Part shown: positions 1,481-64,000 of the stretch, piece after piece
Numbering within the stretch: the first letter of the stretch is position 1
How the letters are laid out: each line of letters begins with the position of its first letter
Virus record (IMG/VR): IMGVR_UViG_3300042923_000601
Span: 1 to 64,000 of that record
Length of the DNA stretch: 64,000 nucleotides
Strand: one strand, 5' to 3'
Program-made: the position numbers and the translations under genes
The notes under the pieces: model-generated
Databases searched by the model: none
What the model saw: only the letters and a program-made list of their open reading frames with translations
What the model was told of the DNA's origin: nothing

Positions 1481-3235
1481 TTATACTTCGCCTTCAAAAT
1501 CAACTGCGTCAACAAAGATCGTATTCGCTGTAGCCAGCACGATCGCTGTATCAATTGCACGCTCAACGATGTTGATATCCGTTTGGATTGGATTAATAAC
1601 ACGGTTCGTGGAATCGCCGCGAAGGTTGATAGGGCCCGCGAATACTGGAACTGGCACGGTGTAACGGCTCATATCAATGCGGCCATTTTCATCAACCAGT
1701 TTCTTACCGGCATTCGTTACGATCAGGTCCATAAATTCAGTGCGGCTTATTGCAGTGCGGTTTTGAACTAAGCGATAGTATACCTTGAGATAAGCTTCCA
1801 TCAGGGAATCCAGCAACAAACTGAATACGCTGATCTGCTGTTCTTGAGGTTTACCAGTGAAGCCGTCTTTCGTTTGAGCCATGAGTGAGAACAACGATGC
1901 AAGGGTGTCCACATTACATCCCACTCCGTAACCAGAGCGAAGTGCAGACTGAACAGCCTTCAATCCGTCCTCAACAAGGCGAAGGTTAATTGATTTGCGT
2001 TGCACAGAATCGCCGCCTACATAGATGGTACGAACACCATTCGTGATAACCTGAAGGCGTTTTTTGAGGGCGTTCAATTCCACCCCAGCACGGGTAACAT
2101 CTTCCTGCGGAAGCAGGCCGGACGCTACCGACGTGACGATCTCATTGATTTTTTCTTGAAGCCATGACACGTGACGATCCAGCGAGTCGGATTGTTTGAA
2201 CCCGGACAGCGTGATCTTACGGTCTCTGATTATGACAGTGTTAGCATAACCTTTGGCCAACCCAGCGATGTTATTGGCATCAATAGTCGTGTTTTCTTCA
2301 TACCCAGCAGCGCCAGTCACCTTGACCAGGTCGTTATAGTCGTCGCTGTCTTGAATGCTATTAGCACGAGTGTATACGATTGCCATATTCAGGAAAATCT
2401 CAGGCTGACTTTGATTGAGCGCTTCAATGAAGCGCACTGCATTCTGGTTTACACCGCTGCAGAAGATCACAAGCGATTTATCAGCAGCCTTCAGTTTACG
2501 AGCGTACTCGTACAGGCTGTTTTCAATGTTTACTTTACCGTCGATAACCAAGATTTCAGCATTCCGCAAGAAACTTGCATTGACACCGTCCTGATTAGCA
2601 AAGGCAGAATGCATCAATTGCCCGCTGATGTTAAGGCCACTTGTGGATTGGATGTAGGTATTACTGCCCATGCTGATATCCAGCAGCACATTCTCATTAG
2701 CCAAATCGTTATTACCGTTGTACAGTTCAACCAGGACATCAGCCAGTTCGCTATTACCGTCAACTGAAGTGAATGCCAGGTCGAAAACATCGGCTGCTGT
2801 GAGTGCTGTTGCACCGTTCTCCAGATCATTAACCAACGCACCGATAATGGTAGATGCAGCGTCCTGAATCTGGGATGGGGTGTATTTAGCAAACAGTTCC
2901 TTGTTATTGCGCAGTTCATGGTATACCGCAGCGGTTACCAGAATTGCAGTTGTTGTACCGTCACCTACATGGTGCGCCTGATGACCAGCCACTTCGAATA
3001 CCATCTGGTATACGGCCTCAGCTGTAGCGTCATCAAATCGTATCATGTTCAAGTTTTCGTAGCCGTCTTTCGACGCATTGATTTCGTTTTTGATTTTGAA
3101 GATGTTATGCGTCCCGAACGGTCCGTATGTAGCGCCAACTGTATTTTCAATAATCGACATAACTTGAGCCACTGTTCCGTGGAACGTGGTTTTAGGCGAA
3201 ACGTTTTGTTTAAAATAGCGACGATCCATTGGCAT
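1481..3235 (-). CDS. groEL: Phage chaperonin (GroEL/Cpn60-like)
   Basis: 584 aa; TYGPFG, SKDG, GDGTTTA nucleotide-binding motif, GYGVG; divergent, no GGM tail. Confidence 0.9.
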   Translation of the reverse strand: MPMDRRYFKQNVSPKTTFHGTVAQVMSIIENTVGATYGPFGTHNIFKIKNEINASKDGYENLNMIRFDDATAEAVYQMVFEVAGHQAHHVGDGTTTAILVTAAVYHELRNNKELFAKYTPSQIQDAASTIIGALVNDLENGATALTAADVFDLAFTSVDGNSELADVLVELYNGNNDLANENVLLDISMGSNTYIQSTSGLNISGQLMHSAFANQDGVNASFLRNAEILVIDGKVNIENSLYEYARKLKAADKSLVIFCSGVNQNAVRFIEALNQSQPEIFLNMAIVYTRANSIQDSDDYNDLVKVTGAAGYEENTTIDANNIAGLAKGYANTVIIRDRKITLSGFKQSDSLDRHVSWLQEKINEIVTSVASGLLPQEDVTRAGVELNALKKRLQVITNGVRTIYVGGDSVQRKSINLRLVEDGLKAVQSALRSGYGVGCNVDTLASLFSLMAQTKDGFTGKPQEQQISVFSLLLDSLMEAYLKVYYRLVQNRTAISRTEFMDLIVTNAGKKLVDENGRIDMSRYTVPVPVFAGPINLRGDSTNRVINPIQTDINIVERAIDTAIVLATANTIFVDAVDFEGEV

Positions 3236-5400: not shown

Positions 5401-5859
5401 TTATTCATCGTCTTCATCATGGTGTCCATATGGGCGTAGGTTCTTAAATATTCGAGGTGCGTGGATACCGATAAACATCAATACTAACGTTATAACCGCT
5501 AAATCCAGTACACCATACCCAAGGGATAACCCGATGGCTGATGTGATCCAGATGTTAGCAGCAGTGGTTAATCCGCGTTTAATACTATCCTTATCCATCC
5601 AGATTACACCGGCTCCGATAAACCCTATACCACTTACAACTTGTGCTGCAAGTCGCATAGGGTCTCGGTACTGGTTTGTGTCTAAGGTGGATAGAATCAT
5701 GATAAGAGCAGAGCCAAGACATACGAGGGAATGAGTTCGTATACCTGCTGCTTTATTTTTCGTCGCTCGTTCGTACCCGATAATAACGCCAAATACTAAA
5801 GCTAAGAATAGTCTGAGGTATAAGTGCCAGCCAAGATCAGATAGTATTAAAATTGTCAT
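5401..5859 (-). CDS. mgtC: MgtC/SapB family membrane protein
   Basis: IGYERATKNKAAGIRTHSLVCLGSAL, DPMRLAAQVVSGIGFIGAGVI, GLTTAANIW are the MgtC signature. Confidence 0.9.
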   Translation of the reverse strand: MTILILSDLGWHLYLRLFLALVFGVIIGYERATKNKAAGIRTHSLVCLGSALIMILSTLDTNQYRDPMRLAAQVVSGIGFIGAGVIWMDKDSIKRGLTTAANIWITSAIGLSLGYGVLDLAVITLVLMFIGIHAPRIFKNLRPYGHHDEDDE

Positions 5860-5913: not shown

Positions 5914-6888
5914 CTAAACGGCGGAGGTATTTTTTATCGCAACGGATTGTCGGAAATCGTCCGGCCCAAACCCGCACTCTGGGAAGCAGTATACTGCCAT
6001 ATCATAGACAGACTTGAATATTGTGCGAGTAGGTCTTAGCATATTAGCAGACTGCAATCCATTAAATGACATCACTCGACGGATGGCATTTCGAGATGAT
6101 ATACCCTTACGCTCATATACATAATATCGGATACACATCTTTGCGCGTTCCTTTGCGGCTAGAACATCATTTTCATTATATTCTGACATGGTCCAAAATG
6201 ACGATGGGAGCTTTCCTCGTTTCCCTTCTAAAAGCTCTTTGTATATTGGGATCACATCACCGGAGTGCAGCATGTCATTAACATCAGCTGTGATATCTCT
6301 ACCGGCTTTGAACATCGCAACATCGAACTGGTATTCAGGAAATACGAATGAAAACATTGAATACAGCGTATCCCGCCCTGGATAGAGTCTGCGATATGCT
6401 ACATATGCACCCCAAATCCTATTCTCTCGAAGGAATATTACTTTGTCTGGGATGTTGTGAATTCCGCGTAGGTCTAGGTTTAAACGATCATGGATAACAG
6501 CCCGTACGTTGTGTTTGATCGTTTCAGGTGTCCAGTAATCTCTAGGACATCGCGGCATGTCAAGAGGCTGGATATCTAAGTCATCCACGCAGTAAGTAAG
6601 CAGTTCGATCATCGTGTGGAATACTTTACTCACCTCACCTGACAATCCAGATGCCAGTTTAATCTGCCGTAGTTGAGAGATGTCCAGCGCTGCAATTTCA
6701 GCTTTTGTCATTGGATTATACACAAATACATACCACCGGAAACAGATGCGATATCTCATTTTAGAATTCACATCATCCGGTGACCAGTATCCTTTGGGGA
6801 ACTGTTTCCGTGCTCCACTTAACACATCTCTGTACACTTTAATAATTTCTTCTTCACGATTGTCAAACTTGTTTGGGTCAACCATCAT
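5914..6888 (-). CDS. DUF4046-like repeat protein
   Basis: Two copies of the pattern: IIKVYRDVLSGARKQFPKGYW and IPIYKELLEGKRGKLPSSFW. Confidence 0.6.
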   Translation of the reverse strand: MMVDPNKFDNREEEIIKVYRDVLSGARKQFPKGYWSPDDVNSKMRYRICFRWYVFVYNPMTKAEIAALDISQLRQIKLASGLSGEVSKVFHTMIELLTYCVDDLDIQPLDMPRCPRDYWTPETIKHNVRAVIHDRLNLDLRGIHNIPDKVIFLRENRIWGAYVAYRRLYPGRDTLYSMFSFVFPEYQFDVAMFKAGRDITADVNDMLHSGDVIPIYKELLEGKRGKLPSSFWTMSEYNENDVLAAKERAKMCIRYYVYERKGISSRNAIRRVMSFNGLQSANMLRPTRTIFKSVYDMAVYCFPECGFGPDDFRQSVAIKNTSAV

Positions 6889-6935: not shown

Positions 6936-6976
6936 AGTTGTAACATTGGCTTTTTACATGTAAAAAGAGAACCCCA

Positions 6977-8038
6977 TTAAGGGTTCTCTACAGGTTCATA
7001 ACGCTGGAGCATCAGTTGACTACGAATGTGTCTAGGCTCATGATTCATCACCCTCGATTGATCAGTAAACCATGAGTGTGGAAGACCAAGATATTCCATG
7101 GAGCCTTCGATATAAATAATCCCTGATGGTGCGTTCTTACTAAGAAGACTTTCAAGTTCATCATCCGTCAGGTCATAGAATGTATCATCCCATTTTAAGG
7201 AGTTGCGAATGAAGTTCTCCGCGTCCCATGCGTCGGAACGGTTTTCGGAGTATGCTGCCGCTGACGTGATAACCCTAAACGAATAACTACCGTCGTTAGC
7301 TGCACGTGCCTTGAACGATCCCATGTTCTTACATGATAACTGAGACAACCAGAACACGTTTTTATTGAACTCGACATCATTGTAGAAATGAACCGGGAAG
7401 TGGAGCTTGTCGGAGTACTCAAGCATCTCTGTGTTATTGCGTGGGATAAATGGAGACGCGATTTTATTCCCTAGTGTCTTATTATACTTATAGCGCCATG
7501 GATGTTCAGGGTCTGACCCGTTTTGAAGGGAGGGTTGCATATATGCAGGTAGATATCGCATCGTGTCTTCCAGTAACTCAAGCTTATGATTTGTATTTGC
7601 GCGATTCATGTCCATTAGACATATACCGCTTCGAACTGAGCCGAATAAATGAACCCATGACAATAATGCCAATGAAGACGTCACTCGACGCTGCTGACGA
7701 ACAGACACCAAATATTGATCCTGATTCTTCAGGGCGACATAGAAACTGGCCAGGTTCATTCGATTAAGCTCGAACCGACTCGGTCCTCCACAGTCAGGCA
7801 CGTATACACATTCCCGGAAATAGTACCATGGATTGATCGTACACTCCAGCATAATGCGCTGCCGCATTTCAGGTGACAGATTTGGATCGTGCGGGTCAAC
7901 ACCTTTCAACTTCCGATCGTACAATCTCAGGTGGAAATCAGAATTTTTGATCCCCAATTGTTGCTTAAGCAGATAAGCCAATTTAAGGAACGACGTGTTA
8001 GTAGTGGTATAATCTATGATGTAAGGTTTGCTTGGCAT
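6977..8038 (-). CDS. Terminase large-subunit ATPase-domain paralog with degenerate motifs
   Basis: ATG 8038 after AAAGGAGG; aligns by eye with TerL at 62024-64000 (NPWYYFRE/NYWYFLRE, LNRMNLA/LHRGNLA, LPAYMQ/LPLYLQ); Walker A reads VRQQRRVT; no nuclease domain. Confidence 0.8.
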   Translation of the reverse strand: MPSKPYIIDYTTTNTSFLKLAYLLKQQLGIKNSDFHLRLYDRKLKGVDPHDPNLSPEMRQRIMLECTINPWYYFRECVYVPDCGGPSRFELNRMNLASFYVALKNQDQYLVSVRQQRRVTSSLALLSWVHLFGSVRSGICLMDMNRANTNHKLELLEDTMRYLPAYMQPSLQNGSDPEHPWRYKYNKTLGNKIASPFIPRNNTEMLEYSDKLHFPVHFYNDVEFNKNVFWLSQLSCKNMGSFKARAANDGSYSFRVITSAAAYSENRSDAWDAENFIRNSLKWDDTFYDLTDDELESLLSKNAPSGIIYIEGSMEYLGLPHSWFTDQSRVMNHEPRHIRSQLMLQRYEPVENP

Positions 8039-8156
8039 GGTAAAACCTCCTTTGTAAATAGGGCGATAATCGCTCATTTCTACCATGTTTACCCAATACA
8101 CTTACATACAAAAAAAGAAGACGGGCTCCCGTCTTCTTTTAAGTATTAGCCGCAAA

Positions 8157-8945: not shown

Positions 8946-9662
8946 TTAGCAGTTATCTTTAACCCATTGAATCACTTCTGGAAGTGGATTTTCAATCTCT
9001 CCTATTGCAGATGGGTTGGTTTGGACAATCATCATTTGGATTTCCAGGATGTTGCTCTCCAGTGCCTTCTCACCAGCGGGCGTTTGCGTAGCGAGATATC
9101 GCAATACTTCTAGGCATGGGTTTTGAATGTCTTCTAGATATTCCGATTCCTCACTGAGTAGCGACAGCTGTATATCATAATCCAAGTCCTTGATGGAGCC
9201 GACTATGCTCCACGCCGCGTTTTTAATTGCAAGCTGTTGCAATTCCTTAGATGGGTTTTTAACGTTTTCAATATCAGGTGGGCTTTTTTCAATTAGAACT
9301 CTTAAAACTTCAGGGGATGGATCAGGAACGTACGACAGAAGGGAGTTTTCATCCATGGATAACTCAATATATCGTATCTGTACTCGGTCGCTAGGATTTT
9401 TGATATACGCAAACACATGGTGTGGCCAACCCATTGTTCTTTCCATTGCTTCTATTAAGAAGTCATCGCTCAGATGCTCAAGCTTTTCAATGATATATCC
9501 CTCATACGGGTATTCACTGATCGATTTAAGGACAGCTTTGTGTTGAGCAGCCTCGGTTTGATTCTTAACCAATCGAAAATTCTCAACATTCTCGTCAATT
9601 ACCGCAAACTGTTCTTCTTCTGTAAGTATACCGTCACGTTTAATAATTTCAATAGCATTCAT
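8946..9662 (-). CDS. Helical repeat protein (about 24-aa I-x-N-P repeats)
   Basis: Repeats IKNPSDRVQ, VPDPSPEVL, VKNPSKELQ, IQNPCLEVL, IENPLPEVI; GGAGGT RBS. Confidence 0.75.
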   Translation of the reverse strand: MNAIEIIKRDGILTEEEQFAVIDENVENFRLVKNQTEAAQHKAVLKSISEYPYEGYIIEKLEHLSDDFLIEAMERTMGWPHHVFAYIKNPSDRVQIRYIELSMDENSLLSYVPDPSPEVLRVLIEKSPPDIENVKNPSKELQQLAIKNAAWSIVGSIKDLDYDIQLSLLSEESEYLEDIQNPCLEVLRYLATQTPAGEKALESNILEIQMMIVQTNPSAIGEIENPLPEVIQWVKDNC

Positions 9663-9698
9663 TATATTACCTCCAATTTAGTGAGTTTATTACACAGA

Positions 9699-9708
9699 TA
9701 TAATATGT
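9699..9708 (-). promoter_or_regulatory. Putative early promoter
   Basis: ACATATTATA 37 nt before the 9662 start. Confidence 0.6.
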
Positions 9709-9775
9709 AATTCATCATAGGGTTGACCTTTACATCAAAAAAAACAGAGCCATCGACGGGCCCTGTTTTATGAGG

Positions 9776-10228
9776 TTAACAATTGCTGATAAGCCATTTG
9801 ATCACTTCCGGATGTGGATTTTCAAAGAGTCCGATCACTGCTGGGTCAGTCTGAACCGCGAGTAGCTGAATCTCAGGGGTCAAGTTATCCTGTGACGCAA
9901 TTAACATCGGGTCGATTTGAGCAAGATACATCTGCACCTCAGGGCACATATTTGTAATATACGGCAGGTGCTCAGGATGATTGGCAAGAATGTCTAACTG
10001 AATGTCCTTATGTAAATCCTTGATGCAATCAATTGCCGTAGGGTCAATCTTATACACCAGTTGCTGTAATTCCTTGGACGGATTCTTGATCTTCAAGATG
10101 TCAGATAAGCTGGTTCCAATACGACTGCGGACAACGTCTGGTGATGTATATTGTATGCATCCAGACACAATACGACCCCTCTTGTTTACAGGTATTCCGT
10201 TATGATCATTAACTTCAACTGCACTCAC
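9776..10228 (-). CDS. Helical repeat protein, paralog of 8946-9662
   Basis: Shares KNPSKELQQL, IKDL..DIQL and ENP.PEVI.W...NC with the neighbour; GTG start after GGAGG. Confidence 0.75.
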   Translation of the reverse strand: MSAVEVNDHNGIPVNKRGRIVSGCIQYTSPDVVRSRIGTSLSDILKIKNPSKELQQLVYKIDPTAIDCIKDLHKDIQLDILANHPEHLPYITNMCPEVQMYLAQIDPMLIASQDNLTPEIQLLAVQTDPAVIGLFENPHPEVIKWLISNC

Positions 10229-10267
10229 CTTGGCATTCCTCCGTTATCGTTGGTTTATCTACCTATC

Positions 10268-10277
10268 TGTAATATAT
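10268..10277 (-). promoter_or_regulatory. Putative early promoter
   Basis: ATATATTACA (contains TATATTAC) 40 nt before the 10228 start. Confidence 0.6.
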
Positions 10278-10333
10278 ACCTGAAACTATGATCGACATAG
10301 AAAAGACAGAGCCCGAAGGCTCTGTCTAATCGT

Positions 10334-14353: not shown

Positions 14354-14416
14354 ACATCGAACCTCCCTAGATTTTGCTTCAATTTCGTGTTTAGCATTAG
14401 CTAATATTCTAATCCG

Positions 14417-14426
14417 GGTAATATAT
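14417..14426 (-). promoter_or_regulatory. Putative early promoter for DNA polymerase
   Basis: ATATATTACC 64 nt before the 14353 start. Confidence 0.5.
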
Positions 14427-14435
14427 CAATCGAAA

Positions 14436-14447
14436 AACAGAGCAATA
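14436..14447 (+). promoter_or_regulatory. Putative AACA-N6-TR promoter
   Basis: AACA-GAGCAA-TA 28 nt before the 14475 start. Confidence 0.5.
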
Positions 14448-14474
14448 AGACAATACTCTAAGGAGGAGTGCATC

Positions 14475-15767
14475 ATGGCACCAAGAAAGAAAACACTTGT
14501 CGCTACGAGTGAAGAGATCGAAGAAGCTGGCCTGAAAAAGGACTTCTTCTCTGATCGAAGAAATAGTGACGGTTATATCAAACTATCGTTTAATGAATAT
14601 GGAGCGCAGCGTATGGCTCAGGCGGCTGAGCGTCGTATCGAGCAGCGTCAAGCAGAAATCGATCAGCTCCGTTCCCAGCATAAGAAATTCGAGAAACTCG
14701 AAGACAAGCTGGAGACGAAGGCTAAGGAAGAGAATAAAAAAAAGAGTAAGAAGGATAAAAAGCGGGAGAAGAAAGAGAAGAAACGTCTCAAGAATCTTCC
14801 GGAATCGTCCCGTATTCTCTTTGCTGCTGTCGAGGAGTACACTGACAGACATCACAAATCCAAGAAAGACAGAAAGAAAGAGCGTGAGGAGTTTGAAGGT
14901 GTTTCGGAGAAGGTAAAACCAAACCGGGCTCCTAAAGAAAAGACTCCGGAGCAGGAAGAAGCCGAGCGTAAGCGTAAGGAAGCAAAGGATCAAATGGACT
15001 TCGAAATGAAGTTCGATGAACCGATCACGCTTCATCGGCAAACCATTATTGAAGTGGACAAGACGCTACAGGAGATCAGCATGATGCTGGAAGAAACCAA
15101 ACTTTCTCGTGCTCGTAACCGTAACGTTATGATTAAAGACTTGCTATCAGCCAAGGGCTCTCTCCTCGGGAACCGTATATCTAGTGCCAATGGTATTGCA
15201 AGTATTCAGAAAACCAAACTGGATGCTGCAGCCAAGAAAGCGGATGCTAGTAAGGGTGAGCAGAACGAGAAGAACCAAAATATCAACCTCTTGGCCAAAG
15301 CTTTCCCTCAGCTGGTCTCGGGTGGTCTTGCGTCGGCTAGTGTTAGTGCTGCTGGTGGAAAAGGCAAGGGTAAAGATAAAGATGATGTTAAGGATGACAA
15401 GGATAAGGACAAGGGGAAAGGCGGTAAGAAAAAAGAGAAGCGTCGCTCTCAGGAAGATGACGATGACTTCATGTCTACCGCAACCAAACTTATCAAATCC
15501 GGCGACTTTAAACTCACCCCGCACGAAGCTGCTATTGGTATCGAGGGTAAGTATAAGGTTGCAATCAAGAAAAGTTTCAGTACACAAGAATGGAAGTTCA
15601 TTGCAATCGACCATAATGGTAACGAGATTGCGAACTTCAAGGAAAAGCACCCGGGTGTCCTGCCTAAGCGGAAGGATCATGATATTCGGTTCGATGACGA
15701 TAAAGATATTGCACGTTGCCGCCGAACAGATCAGATGTTCCAGGTCATTCAGGTTCCGTACATGTAA
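14475..15767 (+). CDS. Lys/Glu-rich hypothetical protein
   Basis: 430 aa with TAAGGAGGAG RBS; long charged and coiled-coil tracts. Confidence 0.8.
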   Translation: MAPRKKTLVATSEEIEEAGLKKDFFSDRRNSDGYIKLSFNEYGAQRMAQAAERRIEQRQAEIDQLRSQHKKFEKLEDKLETKAKEENKKKSKKDKKREKKEKKRLKNLPESSRILFAAVEEYTDRHHKSKKDRKKEREEFEGVSEKVKPNRAPKEKTPEQEEAERKRKEAKDQMDFEMKFDEPITLHRQTIIEVDKTLQEISMMLEETKLSRARNRNVMIKDLLSAKGSLLGNRISSANGIASIQKTKLDAAAKKADASKGEQNEKNQNINLLAKAFPQLVSGGLASASVSAAGGKGKGKDKDDVKDDKDKDKGKGGKKKEKRRSQEDDDDFMSTATKLIKSGDFKLTPHEAAIGIEGKYKVAIKKSFSTQEWKFIAIDHNGNEIANFKEKHPGVLPKRKDHDIRFDDDKDIARCRRTDQMFQVIQVPYM

Positions 15768-62023: not shown

Positions 62024-64000
62024 TCACCAGCTACTCCCACTGTACCGATCTCCTAAACCGAAAATCTGGTTAGTCGTACGGTCAAGCCTAACCGCTGAGC
62101 GTGCATTAAGCATTGCGATCGCATTTGGTTTCATGACCTTATTCATACCATGACCATCGGTTGTGAAGATGCTTGAGTTGTGATCGTTAGCCTCCAATTC
62201 CCACAGTTCCTTCTCGCTATTACGCTCTAAATCTTCTACGAAGAGAAGATCGTCGAACAGACCAGACAGGAATGGGTTATTCTTAGCTATCTTAGCGAAT
62301 TTGGTTTTACGAAGGACTTTATCGAGGACATCCTCTTGGTTGTAGTCCCGTTCTTCCAGTTCATCGCCATTGAAATTATACCGATTAAACAGACCAAACC
62401 GGCTAAGGTTACGCCCATAAAACATGACGTAGATACATGCCAAGTAAGCGAAGATGACGTCATCGTGCTTACCAGCTTGGTGATCGATGCGTTCTTCATT
62501 CTTGTACTCCAAATAACGGAGTTGATCAACGAAGTCACGGCAAGCGATCTTTTGTTTATACTTATTGTCAGACACAAACTTCAGCAGCAGGTCCATCATC
62601 TTCGGACGAGTGGCTGAGGTGACCTCATGACCATATACCAGCTTATCTTTATTCTTTGGCTTAATGACACCCTTCTTACGGCTCTCTTCAGCCAAGCGAT
62701 AAGCGAAGTCATAGTACATAAAGTTCTTCAGTGGTGTGCGGAGTAAGTCTTCAATAACAGCCGAACCGACATAGTTACTTTCAATAACCAGTACAGAGTT
62801 CGGGAAGTGTTCCATCATAAGCGTATATAAGAACCGCTTAAGTTCTGGAGATCGCATCGTGTTATTCTGGAACAAGGCAACCAGTTCAAGGGTTTCAGAG
62901 TCTACGATCGCAACAGCAGTCGCATCCTTACCTACACCCTTCGACACGTCGACACCGACCAGGTAACGTTTAAATGGATCGATCTCTCTATATACATCTA
63001 CATAGTAGTGACCGTTGATCCGAATCGTGCGGATAGGCTCAGTTGCCATTTCAACCAGCGCTTCGATATCCTCTGCACTAAATGGAGAGTTATTCGACGC
63101 TTTATTCCACTGGAGAAGCAACTCACGACGGATTTTAACCCAGTTATTATTGAGGTTCTCACACTGCTCCGTATACCATTCCATGGTCTTACCCAGTTGT
63201 AAGAATGAGAACTTAATGTAGACCATTTTGTTGGAAGAGTTCTTCCGGAGCCAGGTCTCAACATATTCTGCGTCTTCATCATACAGGTTCTCTGTAAACG
63301 GAGCCGCATTTTTGATAAGCGTAAAGGCATAGTCACCGTGAGTTGTACCAAGGTCACCCGGTGTAGAGGTGATACATACACCGTATGGTTTGCCGTTCTT
63401 CGCCGCGTTCTCAGATGCACGAGAGAACGCTGGCATTGCGGCAGCGTGGATAACTTCATTGAACAGCATGTGGCCCAACTCGTCAAACCACAGGGATGCA
63501 ACGGTGAGACCGCGACCCGCCCGCTCTGCGTTTTGGGTGTTACGGGCAGAGGCTTTAGTCAGAATCTTATTTCCAAGACGTTTATTCTTGATTTCGTTTA
63601 CGTTGTCCGTCTGACTCTTCAGCTCACCTGTCTTTTCATCGAAATCTTTATTGAACTGGAGGTAGAGAGGAAGCAAAGCACGGCTTTCTTTTAGACGGGC
63701 CAAGTTACTTACCGACGCTGCCTTATCCATATTCATAAAGATCGTTGTGGACGAGGTGGCATTGAAGTTAAACTGCCAGAGGTAACGCTGCACGGCACCT
63801 GTCGTCTTACCGAACTGACGAGGCAGCTCTAGGTAGTGAGAGAGGTTATGTTCAAAGCACCAAGCTTGTGCCAAGTTACCCCGGTGTAGCATAAAGGGGG
63901 TACCGCCACCGATATCCGTGGAAGCACCCTCTTCGGGGATTCTGGCAATTTCACGTAGGAAGTACCAATAATTTCGAGACACTTCGACAACGACCTTACT
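62024..64000 (-). CDS. terL: Terminase large subunit, 5' end outside window
   Basis: Frame open to base 64000; Walker A PRQFGKTT, Walker B WFDE, nuclease GVDVSKGVGKDATA and HDDVIFA. Confidence 0.93.
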   Translation of the reverse strand, partial: SKVVVEVSRNYWYFLREIARIPEEGASTDIGGGTPFMLHRGNLAQAWCFEHNLSHYLELPRQFGKTTGAVQRYLWQFNFNATSSTTIFMNMDKAASVSNLARLKESRALLPLYLQFNKDFDEKTGELKSQTDNVNEIKNKRLGNKILTKASARNTQNAERAGRGLTVASLWFDELGHMLFNEVIHAAAMPAFSRASENAAKNGKPYGVCITSTPGDLGTTHGDYAFTLIKNAAPFTENLYDEDAEYVETWLRKNSSNKMVYIKFSFLQLGKTMEWYTEQCENLNNNWVKIRRELLLQWNKASNNSPFSAEDIEALVEMATEPIRTIRINGHYYVDVYREIDPFKRYLVGVDVSKGVGKDATAVAIVDSETLELVALFQNNTMRSPELKRFLYTLMMEHFPNSVLVIESNYVGSAVIEDLLRTPLKNFMYYDFAYRLAEESRKKGVIKPKNKDKLVYGHEVTSATRPKMMDLLLKFVSDNKYKQKIACRDFVDQLRYLEYKNEERIDHQAGKHDDVIFAYLACIYVMFYGRNLSRFGLFNRYNFNGDELEERDYNQEDVLDKVLRKTKFAKIAKNNPFLSGLFDDLLFVEDLERNSEKELWELEANDHNSSIFTTDGHGMNKVMKPNAIAMLNARSAVRLDRTTNQIFGLGDRYSGSSW

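What the first reader, a model, noticed from the sequence alone, without database searches (positions are those of the whole stretch)
6977..8038. Nuclease-less terminase paralog with dead-looking ATPase motifs
It aligns with the N-terminal half of the true TerL in the same window, but Walker A PRQFGKTT has become VRQQRRVT and Walker B WFDE has become FYND. It has no RuvC-like domain and lies 54 kb from the packaging genes. It could be a dominant-negative or regulatory motor subunit, a decoy for terminase-sensing defences such as Avs-type sensors, or a repurposed DNA-binding protein (all inference).
Basis: partly seen in the sequence, partly recalled or inferred. Interest (0 to 1): 0.62.

Follow-up and report, generated by a model that had tools for sequence, protein, structure and literature searches.

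The report
Catalytically dead terminase ATPase-domain paralog
A soil jumbo phage carries, besides its normal DNA-packaging enzyme, a conserved extra copy of only that enzyme's motor domain in which every ATP-burning residue has been lost; such "dead" copies have arisen repeatedly in giant phages, often next to the real enzyme, so they probably do a non-enzymatic job that is still unknown.

Summary
Walker A has changed from PRQFGKTT to VRQQRRVT and Walker B from WFDE to FYND. The arginine before Walker B and the C-motif are also lost, and there is no nuclease domain.

It is not a pseudogene.
- One syntenic ortholog (62% identity, same length, equally dead motifs) gives pN/pS 0.30 with saturated synonymous sites.
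- The AF2 model (pLDDT 93.5) matches the whole T4 gp17 ATPase domain (Z 20.6) and stops at the domain boundary.

It is also not a one-off. Among the best 150 database relatives, about 31 proteins of 320-400 aa share the architecture and the dead motifs, while 104 full-length TerLs keep them. These proteins arose at least 4-5 times. In five lineages they sit beside or within 1.3 kb of an intact TerL. An unrelated analogue (CBB_274 of Rak2-like phages) is already noted in the literature as a "truncated terminase".

Residues outside the ATP site stay as conserved as in real TerLs: the N-terminal ~100 residues and the C-terminal ~60. My best reading (about 0.4) is a non-catalytic partner or regulator of the packaging machinery. 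Decoy, poison-subunit and repurposed roles remain open. The co-fold with TerL gave no answer.

The parts
6977..8038 (-). CDS of the 353-aa TerL ATPase-domain paralog (P0001), stop codon included
   Evidence: ORF list and translation. TerL homology. AF2 pLDDT 93.5. T4 gp17 ATPase domain at Z 20.6. Ortholog P0003 at 62% identity.
7679..7702 (-). Degenerate Walker A (residues 113-120, VRQQRRVT; TerL has PRQFGKTT). The Lys that is invariant in 104/104 active TerLs is Arg here.
   Evidence: The T4 gp17 SRQLGKT aligns with this column.
7376..7411 (-). Degenerate Arg-finger position and Walker B (residues 210-221). D210 replaces an Arg invariant in active TerLs. N220-D221 replace the invariant Asp-Glu.
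   Evidence: Column statistics for 31 dead against 104 active proteins. Alignment to T4 gp17 VRGNSFAMIYI(DE).
7253..7267 (-). Degenerate C-motif / motif III (residues 258-262, TSAAA; TerL has TSTPG). The invariant Thr260 of active TerLs is Ala.
7739..8038 (-). N-terminal ~100 residues. This is the most constrained part (75% identity to the ortholog, pN/pS 0.20). Residues T12, N14, S16, F17, N32, F35, L44, D48, P49, E65, N69, W71, Y72, R75 and E76 are as conserved as in catalytically active TerLs.
8046..8053 (-). Shine-Dalgarno AAAGGAGG, 8 nt before the ATG
   Evidence: AGGAGG is the top enriched upstream hexamer genome-wide.
8076..8090 (-). Conserved upstream block AAACAtGgTAGAAAt, a possible promoter for the phage's non-virion RNA polymerase. 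It is not of the early TATATTA type.
   Evidence: The same block (AAACAgGtTAGAAAg) stands upstream of the ortholog despite saturated synonymous divergence. The match to the genome's AACA-N6-TAAT late motif is weak (PWM score 4.3, reached by 13% of random windows). This is inferred, not shown.
8113..8140 (-). Intrinsic terminator-like hairpin (12-bp stem plus T-run) just upstream, which isolates the gene from the gene before it
   Evidence: sequence. An equivalent hairpin stands upstream of the ortholog.
6966..6989 (-). Terminator-like hairpin overlapping the stop codon. With the upstream hairpin it makes the gene a monocistronic unit.
   Evidence: An equivalent hairpin follows the ortholog.
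62024..64000 (-). The phage's catalytically intact TerL (723 aa). It continues to genome base 64195, outside the window.
   Evidence: It has Walker A PRQFGKTT, Walker B WFDE, and a weak Terminase_6C hit.

Best explanation
The gene encodes a pseudoenzyme. It is a folded, selectively maintained copy of the terminase large-subunit ATPase domain (both subdomains, as in T4 gp17 residues 1-360). It has lost the nuclease domain and every residue needed to bind and hydrolyse ATP or to activate a neighbour's ATP site.

Shown:
- homology to TerL, and the fold;
- loss of the motifs;
- purifying selection;
- membership of a recurrent class of such proteins in jumbo phages.

Inferred: the class keeps only the TerL-conserved residues that lie outside the ATP site. 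These are the N-terminal ~100 and C-terminal ~60 residues, which in T4 gp17 form subdomain II, the part implicated in portal and small-terminase contacts. The class is also often encoded directly beside an intact TerL. I therefore propose that it still docks onto a partner of TerL (the portal vertex, TerL itself, or an unidentified small-terminase equivalent). There it would act as a non-catalytic accessory or regulator of packaging, for example by controlling when or where the active terminase assembles or cuts.

In this phage it is transcribed as its own unit from a non-early promoter, 54 kb from TerL.
For: - Homology and fold.
- Dead site: in 104 full-length relatives R114, Q115, K118, R210, G211, D220, E221 and T260 (P0001 numbering) are 97-100% conserved. 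In 31 short relatives these columns are degenerate, and P0001 has R118, D210, K211, N220, D221 and A260.
- Retained constraint elsewhere: N14, F17, N32, L44, E65, N69, Y72, R75, E76 and P164 are invariant in the dead set, and D289, W323 and others match the active set.
- Selection: the ortholog P0003 is 62% identical, in synteny (paralog, then DUF4046, then MgtC) and without frameshifts. pN 0.23 against pS 0.76, with 0.20 in the N-terminal third.
- Link to packaging: a dead paralog abuts or lies within 1.3 kb of an intact TerL in L006/L007, L014, L047, L039/L040 and L099. The unrelated Rak2-like phage CBB has the same arrangement, where CBB_274 overlaps the TerL start (PMC5259590).
- Recurrence: at least 4-5 origins under a site-heterogeneous model.
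- Own transcription unit, no early TATATTA motif, conserved AAACA block.
Against: - No result shows binding to anything. The co-fold with TerL 1-640 gave no answer, and the portal was not identified.
- Adjacency to TerL could simply be the trace of tandem duplication.
- In this genome and in L009, L097 and L102 the paralog is not near TerL.
- Cultured relatives (AR9, PBS1, BpSp, phiKZ-like phages) have no such paralog, so it cannot be a general requirement of this packaging machinery.
- In the syntenic slot of L006 and L014 the paralogs are only 27% identical while their TerLs are 69% identical. That pace suits an arms race at least as well as a housekeeping subunit.
- The subdomain-II / portal argument rests on analogy with T4, not on a test.
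Confidence: 0.42

Rival explanations
1. Anti-defence decoy or shield. The dead domain mimics TerL towards host sensors that recognise terminase (Avs-type STAND NTPases and the like). It would either soak them up without allowing productive oligomerisation or mask TerL.
For: - The pattern is typical of conflict genes: patchy distribution, repeated independent origins, variable genomic position, occasional tandem copies (L008) and fast divergence. Paralogs are 27% identical where TerLs are 69%.
- It is absent from cultured relatives.
- TerL-sensing immunity is established, and weak TerL sensing by Avs5 against jumbo phages has been reported (10.1101/2025.07.08.663546).
Against: - No decoy of this kind turned up in the literature searches.
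- A ligand that binds a STAND sensor would be expected to activate it rather than block it.
- From my own knowledge of the Avs3-TerL structure, that sensor reads the ATPase and nuclease active sites. These are exactly what this protein has lost, so it would more likely be invisible than a mimic.
- The strongest constraint is on residues shared with TerL outside the active site, which a decoy does not obviously need.
Confidence: 0.18
2. Repurposed protein with a role outside packaging, such as a DNA- or protein-binding factor in replication, recombination or host takeover, that keeps only the TerL scaffold.
For: - In this genome and its relative the gene sits in a block with chaperonin, MgtC-like and DUF4046 genes next to the DNA polymerase, 54 kb from TerL. 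It has its own terminators.
- P0016 lies next to an RNA-polymerase subunit gene.
- The P-loop is replaced by an Arg-rich stretch.
Against: - The residues under the strongest constraint are those also conserved in genuine TerLs. That argues for a retained TerL-type contact rather than a new function.
- Half of the informative contexts are in the packaging module.
- The pI is neutral (7.1), which gives no sign of a strong DNA binder.
Confidence: 0.17
3. Poison subunit directed at competitors. A dead ATPase domain joins the packaging ring of a co-infecting related jumbo phage, or docks on its portal, and stalls it. The phage's own, divergent TerL is unaffected.
For: P0001 does not group with its own TerL. 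By path length its nearest active relatives are TerLs of another lineage (P0006/P0007/L014). Dominant-negative effects of inactive subunits in ring ATPases are well known (general knowledge).
Against: - The identity differences are small (31% to its own TerL against 33-34% to the others) and the deep branches are unresolved.
- Paralogs such as L047_366 and L039_268 are closest to their own TerL, which is the opposite of what this model needs.
- The trans-acting Arg position is lost, which suggests the ring interface is not maintained.
Confidence: 0.08
4. Decaying duplicate or mis-called fragment with no function.
For: All catalytic motifs are lost, and it evolves faster than three of its four syntenic neighbours (62% against 76-87% identity).
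Against: - The ORF is intact and of conserved length after synonymous sites have saturated, with pN/pS 0.30.
- There is a strong SD, and the flanking terminators and upstream block are conserved.
- The fold prediction is very confident.
- All family members end precisely at the domain boundary.
- Some columns are invariant across 31 divergent members.
Confidence: 0.04

Closest known systems
Terminase large subunit (TerL) of phiKZ/AR9/PBS1-type jumbo phages, and the T4 gp17 ATPase domain (PDB 2O0H/2O0J)
   Same: Homologous over the whole N-terminal ATPase domain: 26-34% identity to jumbo-phage TerLs, and Z 20.6 to gp17 residues 40-360. It shares their conserved N-terminal motifs (TxNxSF, NPWYxxRE) and the LP.Y and YD motifs.
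   Different: - No RNase H-like nuclease domain.
- The Walker A Lys, the Arg before Walker B, the Walker B Asp-Glu and the C-motif Thr are all replaced.
- It is encoded in addition to an intact TerL.
'Truncated large terminase' of Rak2-like jumbo phages (CBB_274 and its GAP32, 121Q and RaK2 homologs), also reported in Sinorhizobium phages phiM12/phiN3 (PMC5259590, PMC7760394)
   Same: An extra, short, nuclease-less TerL ATPase-domain paralog in a jumbo phage. I checked that CBB_274 is also dead (GKT to GLS, DE to DS). It is 22% identical to its own TerL, CBB_275, whose start it overlaps. Its function is unknown too.
   Different: - No detectable sequence similarity to P0001 (E 1.4). It derives from a T4-type gp17, not from the phiKZ/AR9-type TerL.
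- It is shorter (235 aa), lacks the long N-terminal region, and keeps the Arg before Walker B.
- It is always adjacent to TerL, whereas P0001 is 54 kb away.
Non-catalytic paralogous subunits of oligomeric P-loop ATPases (for example clamp-loader delta/delta-prime, F1 alpha). This is recalled from general knowledge and is an analogy only.
   Same: A duplicated ATPase fold that has lost hydrolysis and serves a structural or regulatory role beside active paralogs.
   Different: Those subunits demonstrably sit in the complex, and some donate an Arg finger. Here co-assembly is not shown and the Arg-finger position is lost in P0001.
Small terminase (TerS)
   Same: Several dead paralogs occupy the position just upstream of TerL that TerS genes usually hold (L006, L014, CBB_274). 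According to PMC7824862 the classical TerS is a feature of the T4-related jumbo-phage group only.
   Different: The fold and size are completely different. There is no evidence of DNA recognition or ring formation. In this genome it is not next to TerL.

Membership tests
Terminase large subunit (functional TerL) | ASCE P-loop ATPase-domain fold of the terminase type | tested here: met
   AF2 pLDDT 93.5. T4 gp17 ATPase domain at Foldseek E 4e-10 and VIA Z 20.6 over 259 residues. PHROG TerL families.
Terminase large subunit (functional TerL) | Walker A with the invariant Lys (R-Q-x-G/x-K-T/S) | tested here: not met
   VRQQRRVT. Lys is present in 104/104 full-length relatives and is Arg here.
Terminase large subunit (functional TerL) | Walker B Asp plus the catalytic Glu | tested here: not met
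   FYND (N220, D221) against the invariant D-E. The ortholog has FYNN.
Terminase large subunit (functional TerL) | C-terminal RNase H-like nuclease domain | tested here: not met
   The protein ends at the ATPase-domain boundary with a terminator at the stop codon. All 29 aligned family members end at the same column.
Terminase large subunit (functional TerL) | ATP hydrolysis and DNA translocation | not testable with these tools
   Needs a biochemical assay. The sequence predicts no hydrolysis.
Short, dead TerL-N paralogs of phiKZ/AR9-type jumbo phages (the class delineated here) | 320-400 aa, TerL ATPase domain only, catalytic motifs degenerate, and co-resident with an intact TerL | tested here: met
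   P0001 meets all four features. About 31 such representatives stand among the best 150 hits. Co-residence with an intact TerL was seen directly in G000, L006, L014, L039, L047 and L099.
Short, dead TerL-N paralogs of phiKZ/AR9-type jumbo phages (the class delineated here) | A single common origin (a true family rather than a convergent class) | tested here: not met
   FastTree grouped 30 of them (SH 94). With LG+C20 PMSF at least 5 label changes are forced by well-supported branches: L047_par366 with the window's TerL clade at 99, P0150 at 97 and P0153 at 100. The placement of P0001/P0003 is unresolved.
Rak2-like 'truncated terminase' (CBB_274 type) | Sequence homology to CBB_274 / gp17-type terminase | tested here: not met
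   BLASTP of P0001 against CBB_274 gives E 1.4. This is an analogue, not a family member.
Rak2-like 'truncated terminase' (CBB_274 type) | Encoded immediately upstream of TerL | tested here: not met
   It is 54 kb from TerL in this genome. The feature is met by other members of the class (L006, L014).
Anti-defence decoy of terminase sensors | Binds or blocks a TerL-sensing immune protein | not testable with these tools
   No host or sensor is known. No such decoy was found in the literature searches.

The most novel reading that the evidence does not exclude
Nuclease-less, ATPase-dead TerL domains are a recurrently invented weapon of giant phages. Under this reading they are molecular mimics of the terminase that either blunt host immune sensors which recognise TerL, or poison the packaging motors of competing phages. 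P0001 would be one such mimic that has moved away from the packaging module. An alternative reading is equally unexcluded and almost as novel: they are the missing regulatory 'small-terminase-like' subunit of jumbo phages that lack a classical TerS.
Probability: 0.2. Interest if true: 0.85.

Novelty: new variant of a known kind. Interest (0 to 1): 0.6.

Why it matters
TerL is the most conserved protein of tailed phages. It is a phylogenetic marker and a major target of bacterial innate immunity.

This work points to a class of selectively maintained, catalytically dead TerL domains that:
- has arisen several times in giant phages;
- keeps only the non-catalytic conserved surfaces;
- often sits beside the real enzyme.

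That implies an unrecognised layer either in how very large genomes are packaged or in phage-host and phage-phage conflict.

There are also practical consequences.
- These paralogs will be mis-annotated as "terminase large subunit". The PHROG families already hit them.
- They can distort TerL-based phylogenies and completeness checks.
- The contrast between dead and active sets marks which conserved TerL residues serve ATP chemistry and which serve something else. That gives a ready-made mutational map for the still poorly understood phiKZ/AR9-type terminase.

Tried and rejected
- Pfam scans of P0001 and of eight other family members found no family.
- Megablast of the region against cultured phages found no match.
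- tblastn of P0001 and P0012 against 50,697 phage records hit only genuine TerLs, essentially one place per record. No cultured phage of this TerL type has the paralog.
- The word-index protein search found only one ortholog. A close-relative scan of IMG/VR found only a foreign TerL.
- Complex prediction with TerL 1-640 plus P0001 gave a verdict of 'no answer' (runs 0.00, 0.55, 0.00). I do not use it for or against binding.
- Portal: I looked for it among the large ORFs but could not identify it with confidence. The 885-aa protein conserved in AR9-like phages is annotated only as hypothetical. No portal co-fold was therefore attempted.
- Expression: no RNA run holds the sequence, only two soil DNA metagenomes.
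- Late-promoter assignment: a PWM built from the genome's AACA-N6-TAAT sites scores the upstream region only weakly (13% of random windows do as well). I report only a conserved AAACA block, not a late promoter.
- Single origin of the family: suggested by FastTree but rejected with the better model.
- Extra domains in the longer dead members (P0030, P0051, P0066) gave no Pfam clue.
- Pseudogene reading: rejected on selection and conservation.

Full report
WHAT IS THERE

The window is the first 64 kb of a 246,689-bp viral record that is rated complete and is found in soil metagenomes. On the minus strand, 6977-8038 encodes a 353-aa protein, P0001. The ATG at 8038 follows an AAAGGAGG Shine-Dalgarno sequence and coincides with the start of the only ortholog. 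The alternative GTG at 8101 lies inside a terminator region.

P0001 aligns with the phage's own large terminase. BLASTP gives 26% identity, E 2e-22. HMMER gives 31% identity over residues 5-346, E 7e-36. PHROG terminase-large-subunit profiles hit it (E 9e-39 and 4e-23), while Pfam sees nothing.

The true TerL (P0004, 723 aa) lies at 62024-64195 (-), so its N-terminus is outside the window.

WHAT KIND OF PHAGE

- The genome has a split multisubunit RNA polymerase beta subunit, type II topoisomerase, NAD ligase and SbcC, plus a GroEL-like chaperonin.
- Its TerL and an 885-aa conserved protein find AR9, PBS1, BpSp, phiR1-37 and Staphylococcus S6-type jumbo phages at 22-30% identity.
- Two promoter-like motifs are strongly enriched upstream of genes. 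TATATTA[CT] occurs in 41 upstream regions, including that of the DNA polymerase. AACA-N6-TAAT stands 30-57 nt before many large structural genes, 33 observed against 7.5 expected.
- This matches the early/late programme I recall for phiKZ and AR9; that recollection is my own and was not tested.
- The strong AGGAGG ribosome-binding sites suggest a Bacillota host. This is an inference.

FOLD AND DOMAIN LIMITS

An AlphaFold2 model built on a 29-sequence alignment is very confident (pLDDT 93.5, pTM 0.92). Its best structural matches are the T4 gp17 ATPase domain, followed by other TerL ATPase domains.

- Foldseek gives E 4e-10 for the gp17 domain.
- VIA-align gives Z 20.6, rmsd 3.9 Å over 259 residues. 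Model residues 22-350 align to gp17 40-360.

The protein therefore corresponds to the complete gp17-type ATPase domain and stops at the hinge that precedes the nuclease domain. A terminator-like hairpin overlaps its stop codon and another stands just upstream of it. The same arrangement flanks the ortholog. The gene is therefore an isolated transcription unit.

It lacks the early TATATTA motif that its neighbours carry. It has an AAACAnGnTAGAAA block that is conserved in the ortholog, but this block scores poorly against the late-promoter matrix. I conclude only that expression is probably not early.

NOT A PSEUDOGENE

The single ortholog is P0003 (346 aa, 62% identity), on a 6.4-kb soil contig. 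It lies in the same gene order: paralog, DUF4046 protein, MgtC-like protein, then three further shared genes. Its motifs are equally dead (VPQHGRVT, FYNN).

Synonymous sites are saturated (pS 0.76) while pN is 0.23, a ratio of 0.30. The ratio is 0.20 in the first 112 codons, 0.32 in the middle and 0.43 in the last 64 codons. For comparison:

| Syntenic gene | aa identity | pN/pS |
|---|---|---|
| MgtC-like, 280-aa and 227-aa neighbours | 76-87% | 0.11-0.20 |
| P0001 paralog | 62% | 0.30 |
| DUF4046 | 35% | 0.55 |

The gene is thus under purifying selection. It evolves faster than three of its neighbours and slower than DUF4046.

A RECURRENT CLASS

An exhaustive profile-free search gave 961 relatives. 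I aligned the best 150 and scored 144 of them after dropping fragments.

- 104 are full-length proteins (about 560-1000 aa) that keep the Walker A Lys and the Walker B Asp-Glu.
- About 31 are proteins of 320-400 aa in which one or both motifs are lost.
- All 29 aligned members of the short set start at their own Met and end within a few residues of the same column, RELLL[QK]R, which is the domain boundary. They are therefore not contig-end fragments.

A column-by-column comparison of 31 dead against 104 active proteins is clear-cut.

- In the active set R114, Q115, K118, A205, R210, G211, D220, E221 and T260 (P0001 numbering) are 97-100% conserved. In the dead set these columns are degenerate.
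- R210 lies ten residues before Walker B. It aligns with the Arg of T4 gp17 'VRGNS'. This is the position where a trans-acting arginine finger was described for P74-26 TerL. The R139A mutant appears in the PDB list, but the mapping itself is an analogy.
- Outside the ATP site the dead set is as conserved as the active set, or more so. This holds for T12, N14, S16, F17, L24, N32, F35, L44, D48, P49, E65, N69, W71, Y72, R75, E76, A97, P164, Y166, Y288, D289, W323 and the R/E/L motif at 340-344.
- By the T4 structure, the N-terminal and C-terminal segments of the ATPase domain together form subdomain II. The literature I recall implicates that subdomain in contacts with the portal and the small terminase. 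I could not test this here.

ORIGINS

FastTree put most short proteins in one group. A site-heterogeneous IQ-TREE model did not.

- The paralog of L047 is sister to the clade of the window's own TerL plus L047's TerL (support 99).
- P0150 and P0153 are nested in other active clades (97 and 100).
- At least five changes of state are forced by well-supported branches.
- P0001 and P0003 sit on a long, unresolved branch, away from their own TerL.
- L047 comes from a close relative of this phage, with TerL 62% identical. It carries a different dead paralog directly downstream of TerL: 39% identical to that TerL and 29% to P0001. The window genome has no copy of that one.

The architecture has therefore been invented or retained several times.

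GENOMIC CONTEXT

A dead paralog lies beside an intact TerL in five lineages.

| Locus | Arrangement |
|---|---|
| L006/L007 | 346 aa, then a 22-nt gap, then TerL of 685 aa |
| L014 | 327 aa abutting TerL of 736 aa |
| L047 | TerL, then 366 aa |
| L039/L040 | 268 aa, then TerL |
| L099 | 341 aa, one gene, then TerL of 701 aa |

- It is not near TerL in this genome, nor in L009/L010, L097 or L102.
- Other contigs are too short to tell.
- L008 has two or three TerL-N-like genes in tandem.
- In the syntenic slot of L006 and L014 the paralogs share 27% identity while the adjacent TerLs share 69%.
- L085 and L087 are a different case: genuine TerLs split into two exon-like ORFs with intact motifs.

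PRECEDENT

[quoted passage not shown] They call it unusual and assign no function (PMC5259590, PMC7760394).

I checked CBB_274. It is 235 aa and overlaps the start of TerL CBB_275. It is 22% identical to the ATPase domain of CBB_275, and it is also dead (GKT to GLS, DE to DS). It shows no sequence similarity to P0001, so it is an independent analogue derived from a T4-type terminase. I found no paper that describes such paralogs for phiKZ/AR9-type terminases, that analyses their motif decay, or that proposes a terminase decoy.

INTERPRETATION

Shown:
- P0001 is a folded, selected TerL ATPase-domain homolog without a nuclease domain and without any of the residues of the ATP site.
- It belongs to a recurrent class in jumbo phages.

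Inferred: what the protein keeps is what TerL uses for something other than ATP chemistry. Together with the repeated adjacency to TerL, this most simply suggests that it still docks on a TerL partner (portal, TerL or an unknown small-terminase equivalent) and acts as a non-catalytic accessory or regulator of packaging. I put this at about 0.4.

The rivals and my estimates:
- An immune decoy or shield is suggested by fast evolution, patchiness and recurrence. It is weakened because the protein has lost the active-site features that I recall the Avs3-type sensor reading (0.18).
- A repurposed role outside packaging is suggested by its position in this genome (0.17).
- A poison subunit aimed at competitor phages (0.08).
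- A functionless remnant is largely refuted (0.04).

The one direct test I could run, a co-fold with TerL 1-640, returned no answer and counts neither way.

VERDICT

The main added value is that this is one member of an unrecognised, repeatedly evolved class of terminase pseudoenzymes, for which only a passing annotation precedent exists in another phage group.

Noticed in passing
window 62024-64000 (-), continuing to genome base 64195: The intact TerL gene runs off the end of the window. Its first 65 residues are outside, including the TxNxSF and DP motifs shared with the paralog. An in-window alignment therefore misses the N-terminal homology.
   Followed up: yes
Whole genome G000; for example window 14354-14480 (DNA polymerase upstream), 10229-10330, 9663-9775: Two enriched upstream motifs. 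TATATTA[CT] occurs in 41 upstream regions. AACA-N6-TAAT stands 30-57 nt before the starts of many large structural genes (33 observed against 7.5 expected). They look like the early and late promoter classes of AR9/phiKZ-type phages with two phage RNA polymerases, and they may hint at uracil-containing DNA.
   Followed up: partly
window 5401-5859 (-), 5914-6888 (-), 1481-3235 (-): The phage encodes an MgtC-like membrane protein (87% identical in the relative), a fast-evolving DUF4046 protein (31-35% identical in the relative) and a GroEL-like chaperonin. All are syntenic with the paralog in the related contig L004.
   Followed up: partly
window 8946-9662 (-) and 9776-10228 (-): Two neighbouring genes are paralogs of each other (phrog_5925/17056, unknown function; shared repeats such as 'IKNPSKELQQL'). 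Each has an early-type TATATTA motif and is preceded by a terminator.
   Followed up: no
L008 1127-3404 (Logan SRR29074717 contig): A tandem array of TerL-N-like genes: 275 aa (middle of the domain missing), 346 aa (dead motifs) and a 100-aa fragment. This suggests local amplification of the paralog in some phages.
   Followed up: partly
L085 9995-13076 and L087 9995-12449 (IMG/VR contigs): Genuine TerL genes split into two ORFs (217/226 aa and 476 aa) with intact Walker A and B, separated by about 1 kb or 0.35 kb. These are probably intron- or homing-endonuclease-interrupted terminases and should not be confused with the dead paralogs.
   Followed up: partly
L047 2281-5674 (IMGVR_UViG_3300025526_000024): A close relative of this phage (TerL 62% identical) carries a different dead paralog (366 aa) directly downstream of TerL. 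That paralog is absent from the window's genome, so related phages carry non-orthologous dead copies.
   Followed up: yes
Protein P0066 (572 aa, metagenomic): A dead ATPase domain preceded by about 170 residues that resemble the start of the TerL nuclease domain, with its first catalytic Asp replaced (GVSVS). This is a permuted or fused dead terminase. Pfam finds nothing.
   Followed up: no
L096 47177-47884 (Pectobacterium phage CBB, CBB_274): The published 'truncated terminase' of Rak2-like phages is also catalytically dead (GLS for GKT, DS for DE). It overlaps the TerL start by 14 nt, which suggests translational coupling.
   Followed up: yes
L002 2602-3837 (genome 64208-65443) and homologs in L006, L014, L047, L099: A protein of about 400-425 aa and unknown function is always encoded immediately upstream of TerL, or of the paralog-TerL pair. 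It is a candidate packaging partner that was not examined further.
   Followed up: no
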